NCBI GenBank assembly: GCA_021613535.1 | Contig: CP075496.1 | Location: 806,001 to 870,000 of the forward strand | Direction: 5' to 3' | Length of the DNA stretch: 64,000 bases | DNA from: Adineta vaga | Taxonomy: Eukaryota > Animalia > Rotifera | Translations under genes and position numbers: made by a program | The notes under the pieces: model-generated | The model's database searches: none | Seen by the model: only the letters and a program-made list of their open reading frames with translations | What the model was told of the DNA's origin: nothing | Shown here: positions 35,285-58,167 of the stretch, one piece after another | How the letters are laid out: each line of letters starts with the position of its first letter | How positions within the stretch are numbered: position 1 is the first letter of the stretch

Positions 35285-35357
35285 GCCGCGGTGGCTCAGT
35301 CGGTAGAGCGTCAGTCTCATAATCTGAAGGCCGTGAGTTCGATCCTCACCCGGGGCA
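35285..35357 (+). tRNA. tRNA-Met (CAT), elongator type
   Basis: GCCGCGGTGGCTCAGTCGGTAGAGCGTCAGTCTCATAATCTGAAGGCCGTGAGTTCGATCCTCACCCGGGGCA folds as a cloverleaf with anticodon CAT and TTC in the T loop. An oligo-T terminator follows. One G4:G69 acceptor mismatch. Confidence 0.93.
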
Positions 35358-43682: not shown

Positions 43683-45204
43683 TTAGAATCGACCAACTGT
43701 TTCAATGATCTTTTTCTTTGTTTCTTCAGCATTTTTACCTTGATCAACTTGTCTCGACATATCACATAATATACATTCTAAACTATAATTACGCATAGCT
43801 GAGAAATAATTTAACATTTTCTGAAAGTTTTCAGCAACTGGTTCATTTCTCCATTGATGATAACTTTCATATAATGTTCGATTCATTGCTACTTTCTTAA
43901 TAAACAATGCAGCATCTTTCGGTGTTGCAAACTTTCTTAAATCAATAATACAATCAGTTCGACAAGGTAACCAATCATCAACATTCGGTGCACCAAGATA
44001 AATCGGAACACTTCCAGCAACAAATGTATGCCAAAGTTTTTCAGTTATATAATCATGATTTATACTATTTTCAATGGCGATTGTAAATAAATAATCACTT
44101 GTTAAAGCTAATTTTCCAGCTTCCCAATCATAAGTTGCACGATTTTGTAGATTCTGATTAACTGATCGTTGAAGTTTCACAATATGATCGGGTAATGGTC
44201 GAATATTCTTTCCACATGTTCCGAAATTATCAACATCGATATATTGCATTAAATTTTGTACATATGGAGTTCGTTGTGATTTTGTATGACAATTACTATT
44301 CATCCAAAGAATTGGTGCTTTAACATAAGATTCTTTACTCGAATTCTACAAAATATTCATAAAAGATTTTTCTCCAAAATCAATGACTTACTGTTTGTAA
44401 ATTCATCCAATTTGAAGAAGAATTAATTGTTTTTTTCTTTTTCATAACTTCTTCTAAGGAAAGTCTTTTCGGTGTTTTAGTAATCGAATCGACATAATTA
44501 AAAAGCCATGGCCAAGGAATAAATTCATAAATCGATCGATCATAACCATAAGTAACATTGAATAATCTTAATTTATCTTTGTCAGCAGCTGTTGGATAAT
44601 TACTAATCGATTCAAAATTAAATATTAAACCCCACATACTATTTTGACTTCGATAGAGATTATTTAAAACATCAACATATAATTCATTCGAAATTGATGC
44701 ATATGAATCGGCAATAATCGATGGATATGATAAATCATTCGAATCCTTGTGAAATAAATCCAATGCATATCCAACTTTACAAGTAAAATCCGATTTATAC
44801 TCATTATTTCGTACAATTCTTCCACCATTTAAACATTTTATATCATCAAAAGATCCAGCAGATGAATAAATCATTAGACAAGGCAATCGTGAACAGGAAC
44901 GAATGTTATATAATCGACAAAGAGTTTTAGCTAAATGATTTAATTCTTCAGGAATGTCACACCATAATTGACGATCAATTTTCGATAAAATATCATCTCG
45001 TTTAACAAAGATATTCCATTGTGGAAGACTAAAGATATATTTAACTGTTTGATTATTTGTTTGTTTGAAAATTTCATGGGCATTTGTTTTAGGTTTATTA
45101 TCAAGAAAGAAAATTATTAAATAAATATGAATTAATAATAGAATTAGAATTATTAATGAAATGATTTTCCAAAACGATCGTTTTCGACAACAAGAATTTT
45201 TCAT
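43683..45204 (-). CDS. Alpha-1,3-fucosyltransferase (GT10), tandem copy 1
   Basis: Type II TM anchor, one intron at 44346-44391, motif FTIAIENSINHDYITEKLW..FVAGSVPIYLGAPN. Confidence 0.9.
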
Positions 45205-45448
45205 CTAAATAAAAATAAGAATGAAAATGACAAAAAAATATATCGTAAAATAAAAAAGAAGAACTGAAAGTATCTGATTGGTGTGTTCTTTCATTCATTT
45301 ATAATATAGATACATTTATCATTGATATGTCACGCAAATATTATAACGAACGTATGACATATGAAAAAAAAGAGAACAAAATGAAACAAAAATCTGTTTC
45401 GACATTTTTATAATCAAGTTTATTCAATATTAATTTTATATGAGAACA

Positions 45449-47022
45449 TTAAATTCGTCCAACAATTTCACTGATCTTTCTTTTTGTTTCCTTCGAACTT
45501 TGACCTCGATCAACTTCTCTCGACATATCACATAAAACACATTCTAAACTATAATTATGCATCGATGAAAAATAATTCAACATTTTCTGCAATTTTTCAC
45601 GAATTGGTTCATTTCTCCATTGATGATAACTTTCATATAATGTTCGATTCATCGCTACTTTCTTAATAAACAATGCCGCATCTTTTGCTGTTGCAAATTT
45701 TCTTAAATCAATAATACAATCAGTTCGACAAGGTAACCAATCTTCAATATTCGGTGCACCAAGATAAATCGGAACACTTCCAGCAACAAATGTATGCCAA
45801 AGTTTTTCAGTTATATAATCATGATTTATACTATTTTCAATTGCAATTGTAAATAAATAATCACTTGTTAAAGCTAATTTTCCAGCTTCCCAATTATATC
45901 GAGCACGATTTCGTAGATTTCTTTCCGTTGAACCTTCAAGTTTGATAATATGTTCAGGTAATGGTCGAGTATTTGTTCCACATATTCCGAAATTATCAAT
46001 ATCAATGAATTTCATCATCTTTGTTACATATTCAGTTCGTTTTGATAACGTTCGACAATTACTATTCATCCATAGAATTGGTGATTTAACATATGATGAT
46101 TCGCTTGATTTGTTTTCTCCAATAGAATTCTAAACATTTATTGGAATTTCTTTTTCAAAAAAACTCTTTCACTTACTGATGGTAAATTCGTCCAATAAAT
46201 CTCTTTGTTTGACGCAACGTTGATCGGTTGTTTATTTTTCATCACTTGTTCTAATGAAAGCCTCTTTGACGAATCAATGATTCGATCGACATAGTTCATT
46301 AACCATGGATCAGGAATAAAATCATAAACAGATCGATCATAACCAAAACTCACATCGAATAGTTTGAGTTTTTCTCGATCACCAGTCCAAGGATAATAAC
46401 TAAGCGATTCTTCTTTGAAATATACTCCCCACATACTATTACAACTTCGATATTGATTATTCAAAATTTTCACATATAAATCATTTGATATTGGTGAAAA
46501 TGGATCTGCAATAATCGATGGATAAGATTGAGTTTGTGAATCTTTAAGAAACAAATCTAATGAATAACCACGAATGCATTGAAAATCTGGTTGAATTTCT
46601 AAAGATTGATTTGTTCGGATTATTCGTCCATTTTTCAGACAATTCAACTTGATCAATGAATCGGTTGATGAATAAATCAAATGACAAGGTAATCGATTAC
46701 ATTGAAATTGAAATGAATTATATAATCGACAAATAGCATTTGCAATGATTTGTAATTCTTGTGGAACATCACACCATAATATTTGATGTTTATTCGAGTA
46801 AAGTTGATCTTTTGCTAAGAATTTTCTCCAAGATTGAAGATTAAAAATATATTTAATTGTTTCATTTCGTGTTTGATTATTGATAAAATCACATGGAATG
46901 ATTTTTGTTTGAATATAAATGAAATCTTTTTGAAAATAAATAATTTGACTTGAAATTATCAAACAAACACAAGAAATAAAAAGAAAAAAGATTTTCTTTT
47001 TATTATTTTTCATAATTTTCAT
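45449..47022 (-). CDS. Alpha-1,3-fucosyltransferase (GT10), tandem copy 2
   Basis: Type II TM anchor, one intron at 46130-46176, same ENS..DYITEK / GSVPIYLG motif. Confidence 0.9.
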
Positions 47023-47572
47023 AATCTAAAAAAACAAACTAGAATTTTATTCAATTGATTTGTTTTTCCTTCGATTCACAGCAACAATAGAATTCGATGT
47101 TTAGATGAATTCTTTTCATTCTATTAATATCATGACGTCATTGAATATTTACTTTCTCGTACATCTTCTTTCGTTCTCTCAGACGAATATTTGTGAAATA
47201 TCATTCTTATGTACGATTGAAATAAACGAGAATATCATGTAAAAATTCATATTTTCTAAATAGTATAGAACGTGATTTAAAGTACAAAATTTTATGCAAA
47301 CTAACAAAGAAAACATATGAAAAGTAAGTTTTTAACAAATCAAATCATTCATTTTTATTTAGATAGATAATTTGTTTCAATAACCATGAGTTTATTCTGA
47401 AAATTATCGTTTTAATCAAACAAGATCAAACTTCTTCTTCACTTTTAAACATTATACAGAATATCGGATAACATTAATTGAATATTCTTTTTCTTTCCAT
47501 ACGAAATCTTTAGCAATAACAATAACGTATATTTCTTTAAAGGCAGAAAAATCATCAATAATCACCACAACA

Positions 47573-49134
47573 TTAAATTCGTCCAACAATTTCAATTATT
47601 TTCTTCTTTGTTTCTTCCGAACTTTGACCTCGATCAACTTGTCTCGACATATCACATAAAACACATTCTAAATTATAATTACGCATCGATGAAAAATAAT
47701 TCAACATTTTCTGCAATTTTTCACGAATTGGTTCATTTCTCCATTGATGATAACTTTCATATAATGTTCGATTCGTCGCTACTTTCTTGATAAACAATGC
47801 AGCATCTTTCGGTGTTGCAAACTTTCTTAAATCAATAATACAATCAGTTCGACAAGGTAACCAATCATCAACATTCGGTGCACCAAGATAAATTGGAATA
47901 CTTCCGACCAGAAGTGGTTGCCAAAGTTTTTCAGTTATATAATCATAACTAACACTGTTTTCAATTGCGATTGTAAACAGATAATTGTTTGTCAATTCTA
48001 ATTTTCCCGCAACCCAATTATAACTTCCAATGTTCTTAAGACTTTGATTAACTGAACCTTGAATTTCAGCAATGTGTTGGGGTAATGGTCGAATATCCTT
48101 TCCACATGTACCGAAATTATCAATATCAATGAATTTCATCATCTTTGTTACATATTCAGTTCGTTTTGATAAAGTGCGACAATTACTATTCATCCATAGA
48201 ATTGGTGATTTAACATATGATGATTCGCTTGATTTGTTTTCTCCAATAGAATTCTAAACATTTATTGGAATTTCTTTTTCGAAAAAACTCTTTCACTTAC
48301 TGATGGTAAATTCGTCCAATAAATCTCTTTGTTTGACGCAACGTTGATCGGTTGTTTATTTTTCATTACTTGTTCTAATGAAAGTCTCCTCGACGCATCA
48401 ATGATTTGATCAATATAATTCATTAACCATGGATCAGGAATAAAATCATAAACAGATCGATCATAACCAAAACTCACATTAAACAGTTTGAGTTTTTCTC
48501 GATCACCAGTCCAAGGATAATAACTAAGTGATTCGTAATTAAAATAAACTCCCCACATACTATTACAACTTCGATATTGATTATTCAAAATTTTCACATA
48601 TAAATCATTTGATATTGGTGAAAATGGATCTGCAATAATTGATGGATAAGATTGATTTTGTGAATCTTTAAGAAATAAATCTAATGAATAACCAAGTTTA
48701 CATTGAAAATTAGATTGAATATTCTTAATCTTTGTCTTGATTATTTGATAGTTTGAAGTACATTGAACATTGCTTATTGAAGTTGGTGAAGAATAAATCA
48801 AATGACAGGGTAATCGAGTACAGTTAGATACTTCATAGAATCGACAAATAGCATTGGCAATGATTTGTAATTCTTGTGGAACATCACACCATGATGTTTG
48901 ATGTTTATTCGAGTAAAGTTGATCTTTTGCTAAAAAGTTTCTCCAACGTTCAATCTGAAAAATATACTTGATTGTTTCATTTCGTATCTGATCATTAAAA
49001 TCACATTGAATTGTTTTGGGTTGAACGTCATCCATATGAGTACCAGTTCGATGAAGTAAAACTAAGGACGCCAGACTAGATAAACAAATAAGTGTGAAAA
49101 GAAATCTTCTTTTTTTTCTTTTGCGATTTATCAT
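47573..49134 (-). CDS. Alpha-1,3-fucosyltransferase (GT10), tandem copy 3
   Basis: Likely start MINRKRKKRRFLFTLICLSSLASLVLL (basic tail + TM), one intron, motif FTIAIENSVSYDYITEKLWQPLLVGSIPIYLGAPN. Confidence 0.9.
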
Positions 49135-51022
49135 TTCGGCATTTGATCGAATTTTTGAACATAATTTTTGAATAATGATTGCATTTACATTTACAGATAA
49201 CGAATAATCTAGAGAGTTACATTGCAATATTTCGCTTTCTATTGATTTTAAAAACGTCAATGTCTTACTCATGAATGGTTGCATAGTAGATGTGATAAAA
49301 TCATAGATGCACACGACGCGCTTTCATTGATTTGTGACATTCACGTTTATCATACACAATATTCTAATGTAATATTGAGAATATTGTAAAAAAAAGAAAG
49401 ACAGGAAGGAAGATGCATTACAGACATAACCAATGGGAAAAAACTCACAGTTAATTTAGATATGCGTTGTAAAAAGGACATAGTTGAGTGATTTTATATT
49501 CTTGATAAATACGATCATGTTATTTTGTTGGAAGGAAAGTATGAAAATGTATATACAGATAAATGACGATATTTTTTGAACGAAATGATAAAATAAAATG
49601 TAATTTAATTATATAAGTTTTAAGAATTTGATATAAGATCAAAAAAATCATTGACTATTTTTTGATGAAGTTAAATAGAATTTCGCCTAGTTTCATTTCA
49701 CATCCTTTGGAAAGTTTCAAGGAAAAGTCCATAGGTTTCATTACAAAAGACAGATATATTTAAGGATATACTTTACAATTATTCAACAATGTGTCTTTTT
49801 AGACGATGTAATAGTGAATGAAATAATTTGCTCATTGATTCTGTATTACAGTTCTTTGTAATTTAACGATTTGATAAAATGATCGAGGGTTCGATACTAG
49901 TTGAAGTATTAAAATAATGTGATCGCTTTGTAAATGGTGTTCATTTGTCAGTTATATGAAAAAAATAATCTAAACGGACATTTTTTTGTTATTAAAAATT
50001 TCAATTAGTATGATTAGACTCTTTTTGTAGAAGAAAACTTTGGAAAGTAACGAGAATGATAAAGAAGACATGTAAAAAATCGAATTGTTTTTATTTCAAT
50101 GATAAAAAATCTGATTTGATATTCAAGAGAAAAAGAAAAGCAAAAATGTGTTAAATGTCGATTTTGGAATGATGTCAAAATCAATCATAATCAAAAGAAG
50201 AGGAGAAACGGATATAATTATTTACAGAGAGAAAGAGACAACGTAGCAAATAGAGATTTCCGTTGAGAATCTAAATGCTTTAAATAACACGAATCGATAA
50301 GTTTGATACAAAAAGAAAGAAAATATTTTCATCGAGATTTATTTGATTTTAATTAATTTGATGAAGATTTCGAAAGAAAAGAAGAAAACAATCTCGCTTT
50401 CTTCTTTTTCTTCTGATTTCGAGAATAAAAAGGAAAAAAGAGTTCTGCCGCACTTTTCTCGTCATTTATTCCCAACAGTCACCTCTTATTTCATTCATGC
50501 GAAGTGTAATATTCACTATAGGAGATTGTTGTTCACTAGTCTCAGAACTAGTAACGCTTGTCACTCTTCATTTAGTTGCTTTTGTTGTTATGTTCGTGTG
50601 TTCAATGACTACTAAAAACAAGCGGAAAAGGGCGGCAAAAAAAGAGTAAGAGAGAGCTTCTTAATCGACAGTGACATGATTGAATTGAAAGAGAGAAAAA
50701 AAAGAAGAACAAGACGACGGGAAATTCATTCAATGAAGGGACTACTATCGACAAATGAACACAATAGAGATTTCTTCAATATCCAGTTCACTTTTCTAAG
50801 TATATTCTTCTATTAAATCTTCGATCTTTTTTAGATTAGAGAATGAGAATCCAATTGAACATATCTTTTCTCTTCGTTTAATAGTTTCAAACGAAAAGTA
50901 AATTATCAATAAAAAATTCTTTATTTAATTAAACGTATCTATTCATAAACTAATTTCAAGTTATTCTTGAAATCTTCTAATAAAATAGACGAATTGATAA
51001 AGAAAGAATTGCGTGTGTATTT

Positions 51023-55460: not shown

Positions 55461-55757
55461 ATTTAATGATTAACAAAACTCTTTTTGACAATCATATAAA
55501 TAACCAAAAACCGGTCATTTAGTTTTTCTTCATTCTTTGCAAATCAATATGCATACATTCGATGTTTTGACTTTTCTTTGTTGTATTCAGATTTTGCCTG
55601 TTGATTAGTCAAATCTTTTTCATATGTTGTCTGTATTTGATGGTTTCGTTTTGATTGTTTTTTTTTCTCCCAGACTTTTATTCCAACAAAAATAATGCTT
55701 GACAATTTTTAACCTTGAAAACAAAAATTCCCGTGTTTTTTCCCATTCAAAAAATGT

Positions 55758-55897
55758 TCGCGCTGGGAGGAATCGAACCTCCTTGCCACCCTTATGAAGG
55801 AGAACAATGAATCATTGGACCGATAGATTATTTCATAATCTCAGTCATGTGATCGATTCATCGACTTAAGTGTGCATTACCATTATGCTACAGCGCG
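55758..55897 (-). tRNA. Atypical tRNA/tRNA-like Pol III gene; CAU anticodon if a 69-nt insertion (55801-55869) is removed from the anticodon stem
   Basis: Perfect acceptor (CGCGCTG/CAGCGCG), D (GCAT/ATGC) and T (GGAGG/CCTCC, loop TTCGATT) stems. A and B boxes present; TTTTTT terminator 3 nt downstream. Joining ...ATGCACAC to CCTTCATAAGGGTG gives stem CACCC/GGGTG with loop TTCATAA. Confidence 0.7.
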
Positions 55898-58167
55898 ATT
55901 ATCAAACAAAATGTATTTGATATTTCTTATGAAAACTGAAACATATGTTGTAATTACATAGCAAAGATCAACTTTCGAAATTACTTGTTCTCTTTTTTCT
56001 TCCGTAGGCGAATGATGTCGATGAAAATTTATAATCTTAATCTCACTAATGAGAATAGTAAATATAAAAATATCTTTTCAAGATGGTATAGTTAATTACT
56101 TCAAGTTCGATTTAGACAGCTTATGAAATAAACACAATGGTCGTTTTCTTCAGAATTATTTTATTGAATATTAAGATTATCGATTAATAAATCTGTTTAA
56201 TATTAACGAAAACGTGACGTGAACAGAAGTAATGAAGATTTATTATTAATTAATCAAATCTCGAAAGAAGAAATTAAATTTTGTTCTATTTCAATCAAAG
56301 AAAAGAATATACATAACGTTTCTAACAGTTGGATGACAAATGTATAAGATATTTACCTTTCTTTCGATGAATAATACAAGTTAAACTTTATGCATTATTA
56401 AAAAAGATTTGCCTTTGTATATGTGTGTGCTTGATGTTAGTTCGAATGTATATAACAACACAACATTACGATTACGAAATGAGACGATGACAAGCAAACA
56501 TTCCTGTTTGGATTGATTGGAAGAATTTCATGTTGTAAGTGGAAATTTGAGAAGAAGAAAAAGGTTTTTCAGTTCGTTATTTCGATGATTTAAATGTTAT
56601 TTATTCTTTTCTTTAAATTATCAAGGTCAATCGAAGGTTTTTTCTTTCTTAAAGAGATGTTTTTATATTTATGTAAAAGAAGAAAAGAACTGATATTTGA
56701 TTTGTTAAGAAAGATTATATTTAATTGAAAGAAAGGATAAAATTGTAAAGGATTCTTTTTCTTAAATGAAGGTCAAAAACTCTTATTTTTCATCAATCGA
56801 TAACAAACAGAACCTAATATCTTTGTTCTTAAAAGAGAATTCTTTTCTTCTTTTGTAATCAATGTATAAATTATTCAAATCGTTCTTCTTCTTCTTCTTC
56901 TTCTGTATATTCTCATTCACACATCTTCTGACATTTCCTATCGTCATCATTAATAGATAAAACGAGTAGGTGTTATCATTTGCTTCGTATTTCTTTTCTC
57001 TACATCTTGTCATTATCATCATTGAGGAAATAGACGAATCACATACACATTAACGTAAACATATACAAAGAAAAAAAACTTCTCCATTTGTCCTTCAATG
57101 TCTTTTATATTGCTACAAGATATATATAACTTGACATCGACAGGGAAGAAAGATCATTCAAATCAAGATGAAACAAAAAAAGAAGTTAACTTTTCAAGTT
57201 AAACATTTGTTAAATAAAAACAAAAGAAAAGTTTTATTCAGTCAATATTGTCTATGATCTGATCGATTGATAACATGAATTCTTTCGTTAATATTTGTCT
57301 ATTGTATATCAATAGAATAGAATATTTCGATTAGTAAAGAAGAAAAACAAGCATTTGATTTGAATGATCATAGAGAGAGAGAGACAGAAGACTTGTTTTT
57401 TATGTGTTAGAATGAATCTTTTCCTAATAAGAAGACAAAAGTGTTGATCCCTTGGGCACTATAGTCTGTTCTATTCTTTCCAATGATAAAGTGTTGTGTA
57501 GTTGATGATAGTAGAAGTTCGTTGTCATTGATTGTAAGGGTGAACAACAACTCTCCGTCTTTCTTGACTGGATGCTCTTTAGACCGGAGGCAAATACAGA
57601 CATACATTCTCTAATTCATGCACTTCTTTGTTTTCCGCACCTTTTTTCCTTCTTTACTGTCATTTTCCTGAAGCCATATGAAAACTCTTCTGCTTCTTCT
57701 TCTTCCTTCTCTGCTTCTCTTCGGCAAAACAGATACGCATTTGACAACAATCATTCGACAGGGAAAAGAACGGCGTTGCATTGATCTAATTGACTCTATC
57801 ATATTTTCACGATCTACTTGGCGGCGAAGCGAGGCGACGTTGAGGAGATGCACACACATACAGGAAAAACCACCGATGGCATATACATACACATACACAC
57901 ACACATATATATATATATATGTTTTTTATACATTGACGTCGTTTAGTGTAAGAGAAAAAGAGGTAAGTTGTGCACATAGCTTATACAGACAGAAAAATGA
58001 AAAATCAATCATGCTTGCAGGATGTATGTGCTGTGATATGCACTCATCTTTCCTATATATGTATATGCTCGTGTATATGCATCATTATATTGAAACATAC
58101 TTCTTTTCCTCCTATACAAAATACTACAGCCATCCATGTGTACATGTCCGCCTGTTCGTTTTATATA

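What the first reader, a model, noticed from the sequence alone, without database searches (positions are those of the whole stretch)
55758..55897. tRNA-shaped Pol III gene with a 69-nt hairpin inserted inside the anticodon stem (non-canonical 29/30 intron or new tRNA-like RNA)
Seen: flawless acceptor, D and T stems, A/B boxes and terminator. A canonical 37/38 intron would force A32/A33 and a weak stem. Removing 55801-55869 between positions 29 and 30 instead yields a perfect 71-nt cloverleaf, CACCC-TT[CAT]AA-GGGTG. The insert itself folds into a long hairpin (CGATGAATCG/TGATTCATTG, GACTGA/TCGGTC, AGATTAT-GAA-ATAATCT). The body is unlike the ordinary tRNA-Met at 35285 (4-nt variable loop, A15/A48, C1-G72) and lacks initiator hallmarks. 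I could not find a strict bulge-helix-bulge. Known: animal tRNA introns sit at 37/38; non-canonical positions are known from archaea and some algae. Inference: either an unusual splicing substrate producing a CAU-reading tRNA of uncertain amino-acid identity, or a tRNA-scaffolded structured ncRNA / small-RNA precursor.
Basis: partly seen in the sequence, partly recalled or inferred. Interest (0 to 1): 0.8.

Follow-up and report, generated by a model that had tools for sequence, protein, structure and literature searches.

The report
Orphan rotifer tRNA gene with misplaced insert
The rotifer Adineta vaga has one tRNA-shaped gene split by a 69-base insert at a place where animal cells are not known to splice tRNAs, and a close relative keeps the tRNA parts unchanged while the insert drifts, so the gene looks used, although nobody has yet seen its RNA.

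Summary
The minus strand at 55897-55758 carries a complete tRNA body: Rfam tRNA scores 41 bits, and ARAGORN in intron mode calls tRNA-Met(CAU). It has A and B boxes and a T6 terminator, and 69 nt interrupt the anticodon arm.

The 29/30 junction is not unique. Five 69-nt deletions, from 28/29 to 32/33, all give a CAU tRNA. Only 29/30 gives an all-Watson-Crick stem. A canonical 37/38 intron is excluded.

The gene is single-copy and unlike any A. vaga tRNA I sampled (70% identity or less). The insert is not a repeat.

A contig from a relative (run X20) carries the gene with all 8 of its differences in the insert and none in the 71 exon bases (P=0.003). The gene is absent from the duplicated A. 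vaga locus and from four syntenic loci of other bdelloids, so it is young.

No bulge-helix-bulge or anticodon-intron pairing fits any junction. A. vaga's own tRNA-Tyr intron passes the same test. No RNA evidence could be obtained.

Best reading (0.42): a selectively maintained tRNA(CAU) gene whose non-canonical intron is removed by an unknown route. Rivals are an unspliced tRNA-like RNA and a young pseudogene.

The parts
55870..55897 (-). 5' exon (28 nt): acceptor 5' strand, D arm, position 26 and the first 3 nt of the anticodon stem (CAC)
   Evidence: Rfam tRNA alignment; ARAGORN -i; 0 differences in the X20 contig
55801..55869 (-). 69-nt insert / candidate intron. The boundaries may shift by -1 to +3 nt and still give a CAU product.
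   Evidence: 8 of 69 bases differ in the relative; unique in the genome
55758..55800 (-). 3' exon (43 nt): CC + anticodon loop TTCATAA + GGGTG, 4-nt variable loop GCAA, T arm, acceptor 3' strand and discriminator A73
   Evidence: 0 differences in the relative
55794..55796 (-). anticodon CAU (ATG on the + strand)
   Evidence: read; ARAGORN
55880..55890 (-). A box TAGCATAATGG (tRNA positions 8-19)
   Evidence: read against the consensus TRGCNNANNGG (established knowledge)
55769..55779 (-). B box GGTTCGATTCC
   Evidence: read; the only B-box-like site in the 904-nt intergenic stretch
55749..55754 (-). T6 run, a Pol III terminator starting 4 nt after A73
   Evidence: read; unchanged in the X20 contig, which starts at 55749
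55854..55863 (-). 5' strand of the insert's outer stem (RNA positions 35-44)
   Evidence: fold. The 9 nt at positions 36-44 are unchanged in the relative; position 35 changes C to U and still pairs with G93
55805..55814 (-). 3' strand of the insert's outer stem (RNA positions 84-93)
   Evidence: fold; unchanged in the relative
55818..55846 (-). inner hairpin of the insert (RNA positions 52-80)
   Evidence: fold. In the relative, two G-to-A changes break G-C pairs, and the insert's folding energy falls from -17.3 to -10.9 kcal/mol

Best explanation
This is a young, single-copy, Pol III-type tRNA gene of the Adineta vaga lineage that selection still maintains. Its primary transcript carries a 69-nt intervening sequence somewhere between tRNA positions 28/29 and 32/33.

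Removing that sequence gives a 71-nt class I tRNA with anticodon CAU. It would most likely be charged by MetRS, which reads the CAU anticodon and A73 (established knowledge, not tested here). It would be a third CAU species beside the normal initiator and elongator.

Shown here: the gene anatomy, its uniqueness in the genome, the constraint on the exons against drift in the insert, the exclusion of a 37/38 intron, and the absence of a BHB.

Inferred: that the gene is transcribed, that the insert is excised, and that the product decodes. The excision route is unknown. It cannot be the ruler-plus-A-I-pair mode of animal TSEN or the BHB mode.
For: - The complete tRNA body scores 41.1 bits on Rfam's tRNA model despite the insert.
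- ARAGORN calls tRNA-Met(cat) with a 69-nt intron, and calls tRNA-Met for every spliced variant.
- A box, B box and a T6 terminator are intact, and the 65% A+T insert holds no T4 run.
- In the only relative that holds the gene (X20 contig, 238 nt aligned), all 8 differences inside the gene lie in the insert and none in the 71 exon nt. The hypergeometric P is 0.0028, and Fisher against all aligned non-exon DNA gives P=0.005.
- The 20 nt just upstream carry 6 differences.
- The insert is exactly 69 nt in both species. It drifts at 11.6%, with pair-breaking changes in its inner hairpin. That is what a discarded intron would do.
- The substitutions at RNA positions 32 and 35 would alter N33 and the anticodon under a 37/38 model, but are intronic under the CAU model.
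- There is no parent family, the insert has no repeat copies and there is no second such gene. The gene is therefore not a dead copy of a multi-copy family.
Against: - No BHB, relaxed BHB or anticodon-intron pairing fits any of the five junctions or the canonical one. The two A. vaga tRNA-Tyr genes, with 16-17-nt introns at 37/38, pass the same scan.
- Eukaryotic TSEN is described as removing only 37/38 introns (PMC10485636).
- A. vaga shows only the two expected endonuclease-domain loci.
- The genome already has at least 8 initiator and at least 5 elongator tRNA-Met genes, so the need for a third is unclear.
- The gene is absent from the ohnologous locus and from four syntenic bdelloid loci.
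- The constraint rests on one contig of depth 2 from an unnamed relative.
- A15/A48 is non-standard.
- There is no RNA evidence. The RNA-like contigs stop at 55674 and 55703.
Confidence: 0.42

Rival explanations
1. The RNA is not spliced. The gene makes a roughly 140-nt Pol III transcript with tRNA-like ends, processed by RNase P and tRNase Z. In it a long composite arm replaces the anticodon arm, and the transcript itself, or a fragment cut from the arm, is the working product.
For: - No known splice-site structure is present.
- The insert's outer stem and 3' tail (23 nt) show 0 of the 8 insert differences (P=0.03).
- The full 140 nt folds better than all 200 shuffles (z=-3.0).
- Earlier notes of this scan report tRNA-type A/B-box leaders driving about 30 snoRNA genes in this genome (s1-489523). 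I did not test that claim.
Against: - The core of the insert drifts at about the flank rate and loses two G-C pairs, going from -17.3 to -10.9 kcal/mol.
- No Rfam family, C/D or H/ACA boxes, or ribozyme core was found in the insert (and direct reading).
- The split anticodon-arm halves stay intact, although with only 17 nt this is weak evidence.
- The inner stem is too short for a Dicer substrate.
Confidence: 0.25
2. It is a young tRNA pseudogene. A tRNA gene copy that arrived in the A. vaga lineage was hit by a 69-nt insertion, and its unchanged exons in the relative are chance or low-coverage noise. This is the default reading of non-canonical insertions in eukaryotic tRNA genes (PMC4090602).
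For: - The gene is lineage-restricted and absent from five syntenic loci.
- It is redundant with 13 or more tRNA-Met genes.
- No splicing motif is present.
- No RNA contig covers it.
- Only one comparator exists, at depth 2.
- Other lone, odd tRNA genes exist in this genome (note s1-494491).
Against: - All 8 in-gene differences fall in the insert (P=0.0028), and 0 of 71 exon nt differ against 33 of 373 non-exon nt (P=0.005).
- Every stem, both promoter boxes and the terminator are intact.
- No intact parent family exists to have copied it from.
Confidence: 0.2
3. The conserved feature is the DNA, not the RNA: a TFIIIC/Pol III-bound tDNA acting as a boundary or regulatory site downstream of the VGLUT-like gene.
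For: Perfect A and B boxes. The site lies about 60-90 nt beyond where RNA-like contigs from the neighbouring gene region end.
Against: Such sites need the boxes only, yet the acceptor stem and the anticodon-arm halves are also unchanged. The syntenic loci of other bdelloids lack any B box.
Confidence: 0.05

Closest known systems
[quoted passage not shown]
   Same: A nuclear, Pol III-type tRNA gene interrupted outside 37/38, including in the anticodon stem-loop. Removing the insert restores a normal cloverleaf.
   Different: The algal introns are many per genome, mostly 3-24 nt in nucleomorphs, and in C. merolae depend on BHB motifs. Here there is one gene in an animal, with a 69-nt insert and no BHB.
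Archaeal tRNA introns at 29/30 or 30/31 (Crenarchaeota, Nanoarchaeota; PMC4090602)
   Same: The same position class within the anticodon stem.
   Different: Archaeal introns are defined by a BHB that EndA cuts. None is present here, no extra EndA-like gene was seen, and no archaeal or bacterial donor was found.
Canonical animal intron-containing tRNAs, for example A. vaga tRNA-Tyr(GUA) at G000 C5:13395325 and C2:4062849
   Same: Pol III gene, intact body, and an intron length within the eukaryotic range of 6-133 nt (PMC4090602).
   Different: The Tyr introns are 16-17 nt, sit at 37/38 and show the anticodon-intron helix plus the 5-bp anticodon stem. The candidate's insert is 69 nt, lies 5-9 nt further 5' and lacks that structure.
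Insertion-bearing tRNA pseudogenes of eukaryotic genomes (PMC4090602, section on eukaryotes)
   Same: One gene, synonymous with many normal tRNA-Met genes, carrying an insertion at a non-canonical site.
   Different: Those are copies of a normal family. This body is an orphan (70% identity or less to sampled tRNAs), and its exons are unchanged in a relative while the insert drifts.

Membership tests
Eukaryotic TSEN-spliced intron-containing tRNA | Complete cloverleaf body with Pol III A/B boxes and a terminator | tested here: met
   Rfam 41.1 bits; ARAGORN -i; boxes and T6 read
Eukaryotic TSEN-spliced intron-containing tRNA | Intron between positions 37 and 38 | tested here: not met
   A 37/38 model gives the loop AAGUCGA with A33. 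The relative changes N33 and the third anticodon base (GUC to GUU) under that model.
Eukaryotic TSEN-spliced intron-containing tRNA | Anticodon-intron pairing with a 3-nt bulge at the 3' splice site, next to the 5-bp anticodon stem | tested here: not met
   A scan of all junctions finds none for the candidate. Both A. vaga tRNA-Tyr genes pass at their true sites.
Eukaryotic TSEN-spliced intron-containing tRNA | A spliced mature RNA exists | not testable with these tools
   The single read-laying run showed no contig over the gene in the RNA-like runs. Poly(A)-type libraries and k=31 contigs would miss a tRNA anyway.
BHB-dependent non-canonical tRNA intron (archaea, C. merolae) | Intron outside 37/38 whose removal restores the tRNA | tested here: met
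   Five 69-nt deletions, 28/29 to 32/33, each give a tRNA-Met(cat) call.
BHB-dependent non-canonical tRNA intron (archaea, C. merolae) | Bulge-helix-bulge (or relaxed hBH/HBh') spanning both splice sites | tested here: not met
   No strict BHB gives a 71-76-nt product. No relaxed form fits any CAU junction.
tRNA pseudogene disrupted by an insertion | Belongs to a multi-copy family with intact members | tested here: not met
   No other genomic match within 3 mismatches of either exon core that is a tRNA. Best identity to 36 distinct sampled A. vaga tRNAs is 50 of 71.
tRNA pseudogene disrupted by an insertion | Exons evolve as fast as the insert and flanks | tested here: not met
   0 of 71 against 8 of 69 (insert) and 33 of 373 (all non-exon); P=0.0028 and 0.005. 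There is only one comparator.
tRNA pseudogene disrupted by an insertion | The insert is a known or repeated mobile element with target-site duplication | tested here: not met
   The insert and both flanks are unique in the 100.8-Mb genome. No direct repeat is seen at the junctions (read).
Cytoplasmic elongator or initiator tRNA-Met | CAU anticodon in a U33/A37 loop | tested here: met
   The loop is UUCAUAA after removal of the insert.
Cytoplasmic elongator or initiator tRNA-Met | Body like the genome's own elongator, or the initiator hallmarks A1:U72, A54 and A60 | tested here: not met
   46 of 71 identical to the elongator at 35285. The A. vaga initiator has A1:U72 and the T loop GATCGAAAC, whereas the candidate has C1:G72 and TTCGATT.
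Cytoplasmic elongator or initiator tRNA-Met | Charged with methionine | not testable with these tools
   This needs an aminoacylation assay.

The most novel reading that the evidence does not exclude
An animal excises a 69-nt intron from the 5' side of the anticodon stem or loop (28/29 to 32/33) of a nuclear tRNA without a bulge-helix-bulge. That would mean a splice-site selection mode not described for metazoan TSEN, or a different enzyme, producing a third, lineage-specific CAU-reading tRNA whose amino-acid identity (C1:G72, A73, CAU) is open.
Probability: 0.3. Interest if true: 0.8.

Novelty: new variant of a known kind. Interest (0 to 1): 0.55.

Why it matters
Animal tRNA splicing is thought to work only at 37/38, because TSEN measures from the tRNA body (PMC10485636), and standard eukaryotic tRNA annotation looks only for that. 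A selectively maintained animal tRNA gene with an intron elsewhere and no BHB would force one of two conclusions. Either it is a new substrate mode for tRNA splicing, or tRNA bodies are used in bdelloids as scaffolds for other Pol III RNAs.

It is also a dated case of the birth of an interrupted tRNA gene. The gene is present in A. vaga and one relative and absent in five syntenic loci. One northern blot or RT-PCR can test it.

Tried and rejected
- **Mobile hairpin or SINE head:** the 140-nt gene, the insert and both flanks each match only themselves in the genome. Rejected.
- **Recent copy of a normal tRNA:** D-arm and T-arm/acceptor patterns with up to 3 mismatches find no related tRNA. Thirty-six distinct sampled A. 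vaga tRNAs are 70% identical or less.
- **Canonical 37/38 intron:** rejected.
- **BHB at any junction:** rejected, with tRNA-Tyr as positive control.
- **C/D-box guide, H/ACA pocket or hammerhead core in the insert:** the motifs were read by eye and are incomplete, the relative destroys the CUGA, and Rfam found nothing at E up to 10.
- **Retroelement primer:** no primer-binding-site-like complement of the 3' end plus CCA exists anywhere in the genome.
- **Horizontal transfer:** no exact exon or anticodon-arm matches in viral or prokaryotic collections. The six metagenome hits to the 22-nt D-arm word are phage or bacterial tRNA-Asn-type genes and are unrelated.
- **Extra archaeal-type endonuclease:** only two PF01974 loci were found.
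- **Reaching the A. ricciae and A. steineri orthologous spots:** this failed. The fucosyltransferase-anchored loci (L019, L022, L023) stop 2-7 kb short, and the neighbouring VGLUT-like protein could not be retrieved. One word search was wasted on an amphioxus VGLUT.
- **Exact-ORF cluster look-up:** nothing found.
- **tRNA-Ile(UAU):** a search with a vertebrate-like pattern found nothing. This is uninformative.

Full report
**What is there**

The window is Adineta vaga chromosome piece G000:C4:806001-870000. The minus strand at 55897-55758 holds a 140-nt tRNA-shaped gene. Rfam's tRNA model aligns to it end to end at 41.1 bits (gathering score 29, E=2e-7), leaving 80 nt unaligned in the anticodon arm. 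The match appears only in the permissive local search, not in the whole-window gathering run. Default ARAGORN also misses it.

With introns allowed, ARAGORN calls tRNA-Met(cat) with a 69-nt intron. Read directly from the sequence:
- The 7-bp acceptor, 4-bp D stem and 5-bp T stem are all Watson-Crick.
- The T loop is TTCGATT.
- The A box (55880-55890) and B box (55769-55779) fit the consensus.
- A T6 run (55749-55754) starts 4 nt after A73.
- The A+T-rich insert contains no T4 run.
- One blemish is A15/A48.

**Where the insert sits**

Deleting 69 nt after RNA position 27, 28, 29, 30 or 31 gives anticodon stems CAUCC, CACCC, CACUC, CACUU and CACUU. The fifth deletion starts the loop with A32 instead of U32. 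All pair with GGGUG and all keep the anticodon CAU, and every product is called tRNA-Met. Only 29/30 is all Watson-Crick. ARAGORN chooses 31/32.

A canonical 37/38 intron would give the loop AAGUCGA with A33. The relative described below differs at RNA positions 32 and 35. Under the 37/38 model those changes would alter N33 and turn the anticodon GUC into GUU. That model is therefore excluded, and the anticodon is robustly CAU.

**Uniqueness**

- The whole gene, each exon core, and the flanks match only themselves in the 100.8-Mb assembly.
- A pattern for a TAGC-type A box followed 71-101 nt later by GGTTCGANTCC finds only this gene.
- The 41-70-nt version of that pattern finds only tRNA-Tyr and one chance overlap.
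- Thirty-six distinct A. vaga tRNAs, including all those with the same AATGGT D loop, are at most 50 of 71 identical to the spliced form.
- The genome has a normal elongator tRNA-Met, with at least 5 loci at 65 bits and one at 35285 in the window.
- It also has a classical initiator with 8 loci, A1:U72 and A54/A60.

So this is a third, orphan CAU gene.

**Conservation**

Of the public runs that hold part of 55500-56150, one from another organism label (X20) gave a 340-nt contig aligned to 55749-55986, with 22 substitutions and one 10-nt insertion.

- Eight substitutions lie in the gene, and all eight are in the 69-nt insert. None is in the 71 exon nt (hypergeometric P=0.0028).
- Against all aligned non-exon DNA (33 of 373), Fisher gives P=0.005.
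- The insert is 69 nt in both species.
- The first 20 nt upstream of the gene carry 6 differences, while the exons carry none.
- Within the insert, the outer stem and 3' tail (23 nt) carry none of the 8 changes (P=0.03).
- The inner hairpin loses two G-C pairs, and the insert's folding energy drops from -17.3 to -10.9 kcal/mol.

Caveats: there is one comparator, at depth 2, from an unnamed organism. The run was also found through shared exact 31-mers, which mildly favours conserved stretches.

**Age**

The gene lies about 60-90 nt beyond the end of RNA-like contigs that run through the 3' part of a VGLUT/SLC17-like gene on the + strand. I reached syntenic loci through neighbouring genes:
- the A. 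vaga ohnologue on C1 (L030);
- two long bdelloid contigs from an ENA metagenome, L027 and L031, which share the VGLUT gene, a conserved 56-81-nt element at window 56342-56418 and a downstream Cic gene;
- a third contig, L028;
- a JGI contig, L052, whose non-coding DNA aligns on both sides of the gene.

None has the gene or any B box in the corresponding interval. The gene therefore arose in, or survives only in, the A. vaga lineage. I could not reach the spot in A. ricciae or A. steineri.

**How it might be processed**

I scanned every pair of cut sites for the bulge-helix-bulge geometry. No strict BHB gives a tRNA-sized product. A relaxed test (3 or more of 4 central pairs plus 3 or more exon pairs) recovers the true sites of both A. 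vaga tRNA-Tyr genes, which have 16-17-nt introns at 37/38, but none of the candidate's junctions.

Reviews state that eukaryotic TSEN removes only 37/38 introns, by a ruler from the tRNA body plus the A-I pair (PMC10485636). They also state that non-canonical insertions in eukaryotic tRNA genes are usually taken for pseudogenes. The exceptions are C. merolae and nucleomorphs, where excision was shown (PMC4090602). A. vaga shows only two endonuclease-domain loci.

**Verdict**

- The evidence favours a gene under constraint over a pseudogene.
- The drifting insert and the intact split anticodon arm favour an intron over a functional insert RNA.
- The lack of any known splice-site structure, the redundancy with 13 or more tRNA-Met genes and the total lack of RNA data keep the spliced-tRNA reading at about 0.42.
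- The rivals are an unspliced tRNA-like RNA (0.25), a young pseudogene (0.20) and a DNA-level tDNA site (0.05).

The 71-nt spliced RNA forms were built only inside scripts.

Noticed in passing
window 56342-56418: A 56-81-nt non-coding element is 91-93% identical in bdelloid contigs L027 and L031, whose coding DNA is only 70-76% identical to the window. It is also present in L052. On the minus strand it ends in AAAG|GTAAAT, like an exon with a splice donor. It lies about 450 nt upstream of the tRNA-like gene and, in L027, about 1.1 kb before a Cic (capicua) gene.
   Followed up: partly
window 35285-35357; L019:19888-19960; L027:2799-2871; L028:6121-6195; G000:C1:10744892-10744964: The elongator tRNA-Met gene keeps its place next to the TRAF / fucosyltransferase / VGLUT neighbourhood in A. 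ricciae, in unnamed bdelloid contigs and on the A. vaga ohnologous chromosome. The fucosyltransferase cluster between it and VGLUT is absent in L027 and L028.
   Followed up: partly
G000:C5:2491386-2491429 (L080); G000:C6:12096847-12096889 (L089); G000:C1:16743659-16743701 (L066): Other lone, odd-bodied tRNA genes: an intron-less tRNA-Tyr(GTA) on an unusual body, although the normal Tyr genes have introns; an A+T-rich tRNA-Pro(CGG)-like gene; and a 71-nt tRNA-Arg(TCG) on a Gln/Glu-like scaffold.
   Followed up: no
L013, L014, L016-L018 (metagenome contigs): The exact 22-nt D-arm word of the candidate also occurs in tRNA-Asn(GTT)-type genes that sit in tRNA clusters of phage- or bacteria-like metagenome contigs. 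The rest of those tRNAs differs, so this looks like convergence of a constrained arm.
   Followed up: partly
window 43683-49314 (minus strand): Three tandem two-exon alpha-fucosyltransferase (PF00852) genes. A. ricciae and A. steineri have similar tandem sets at the syntenic place.
   Followed up: no
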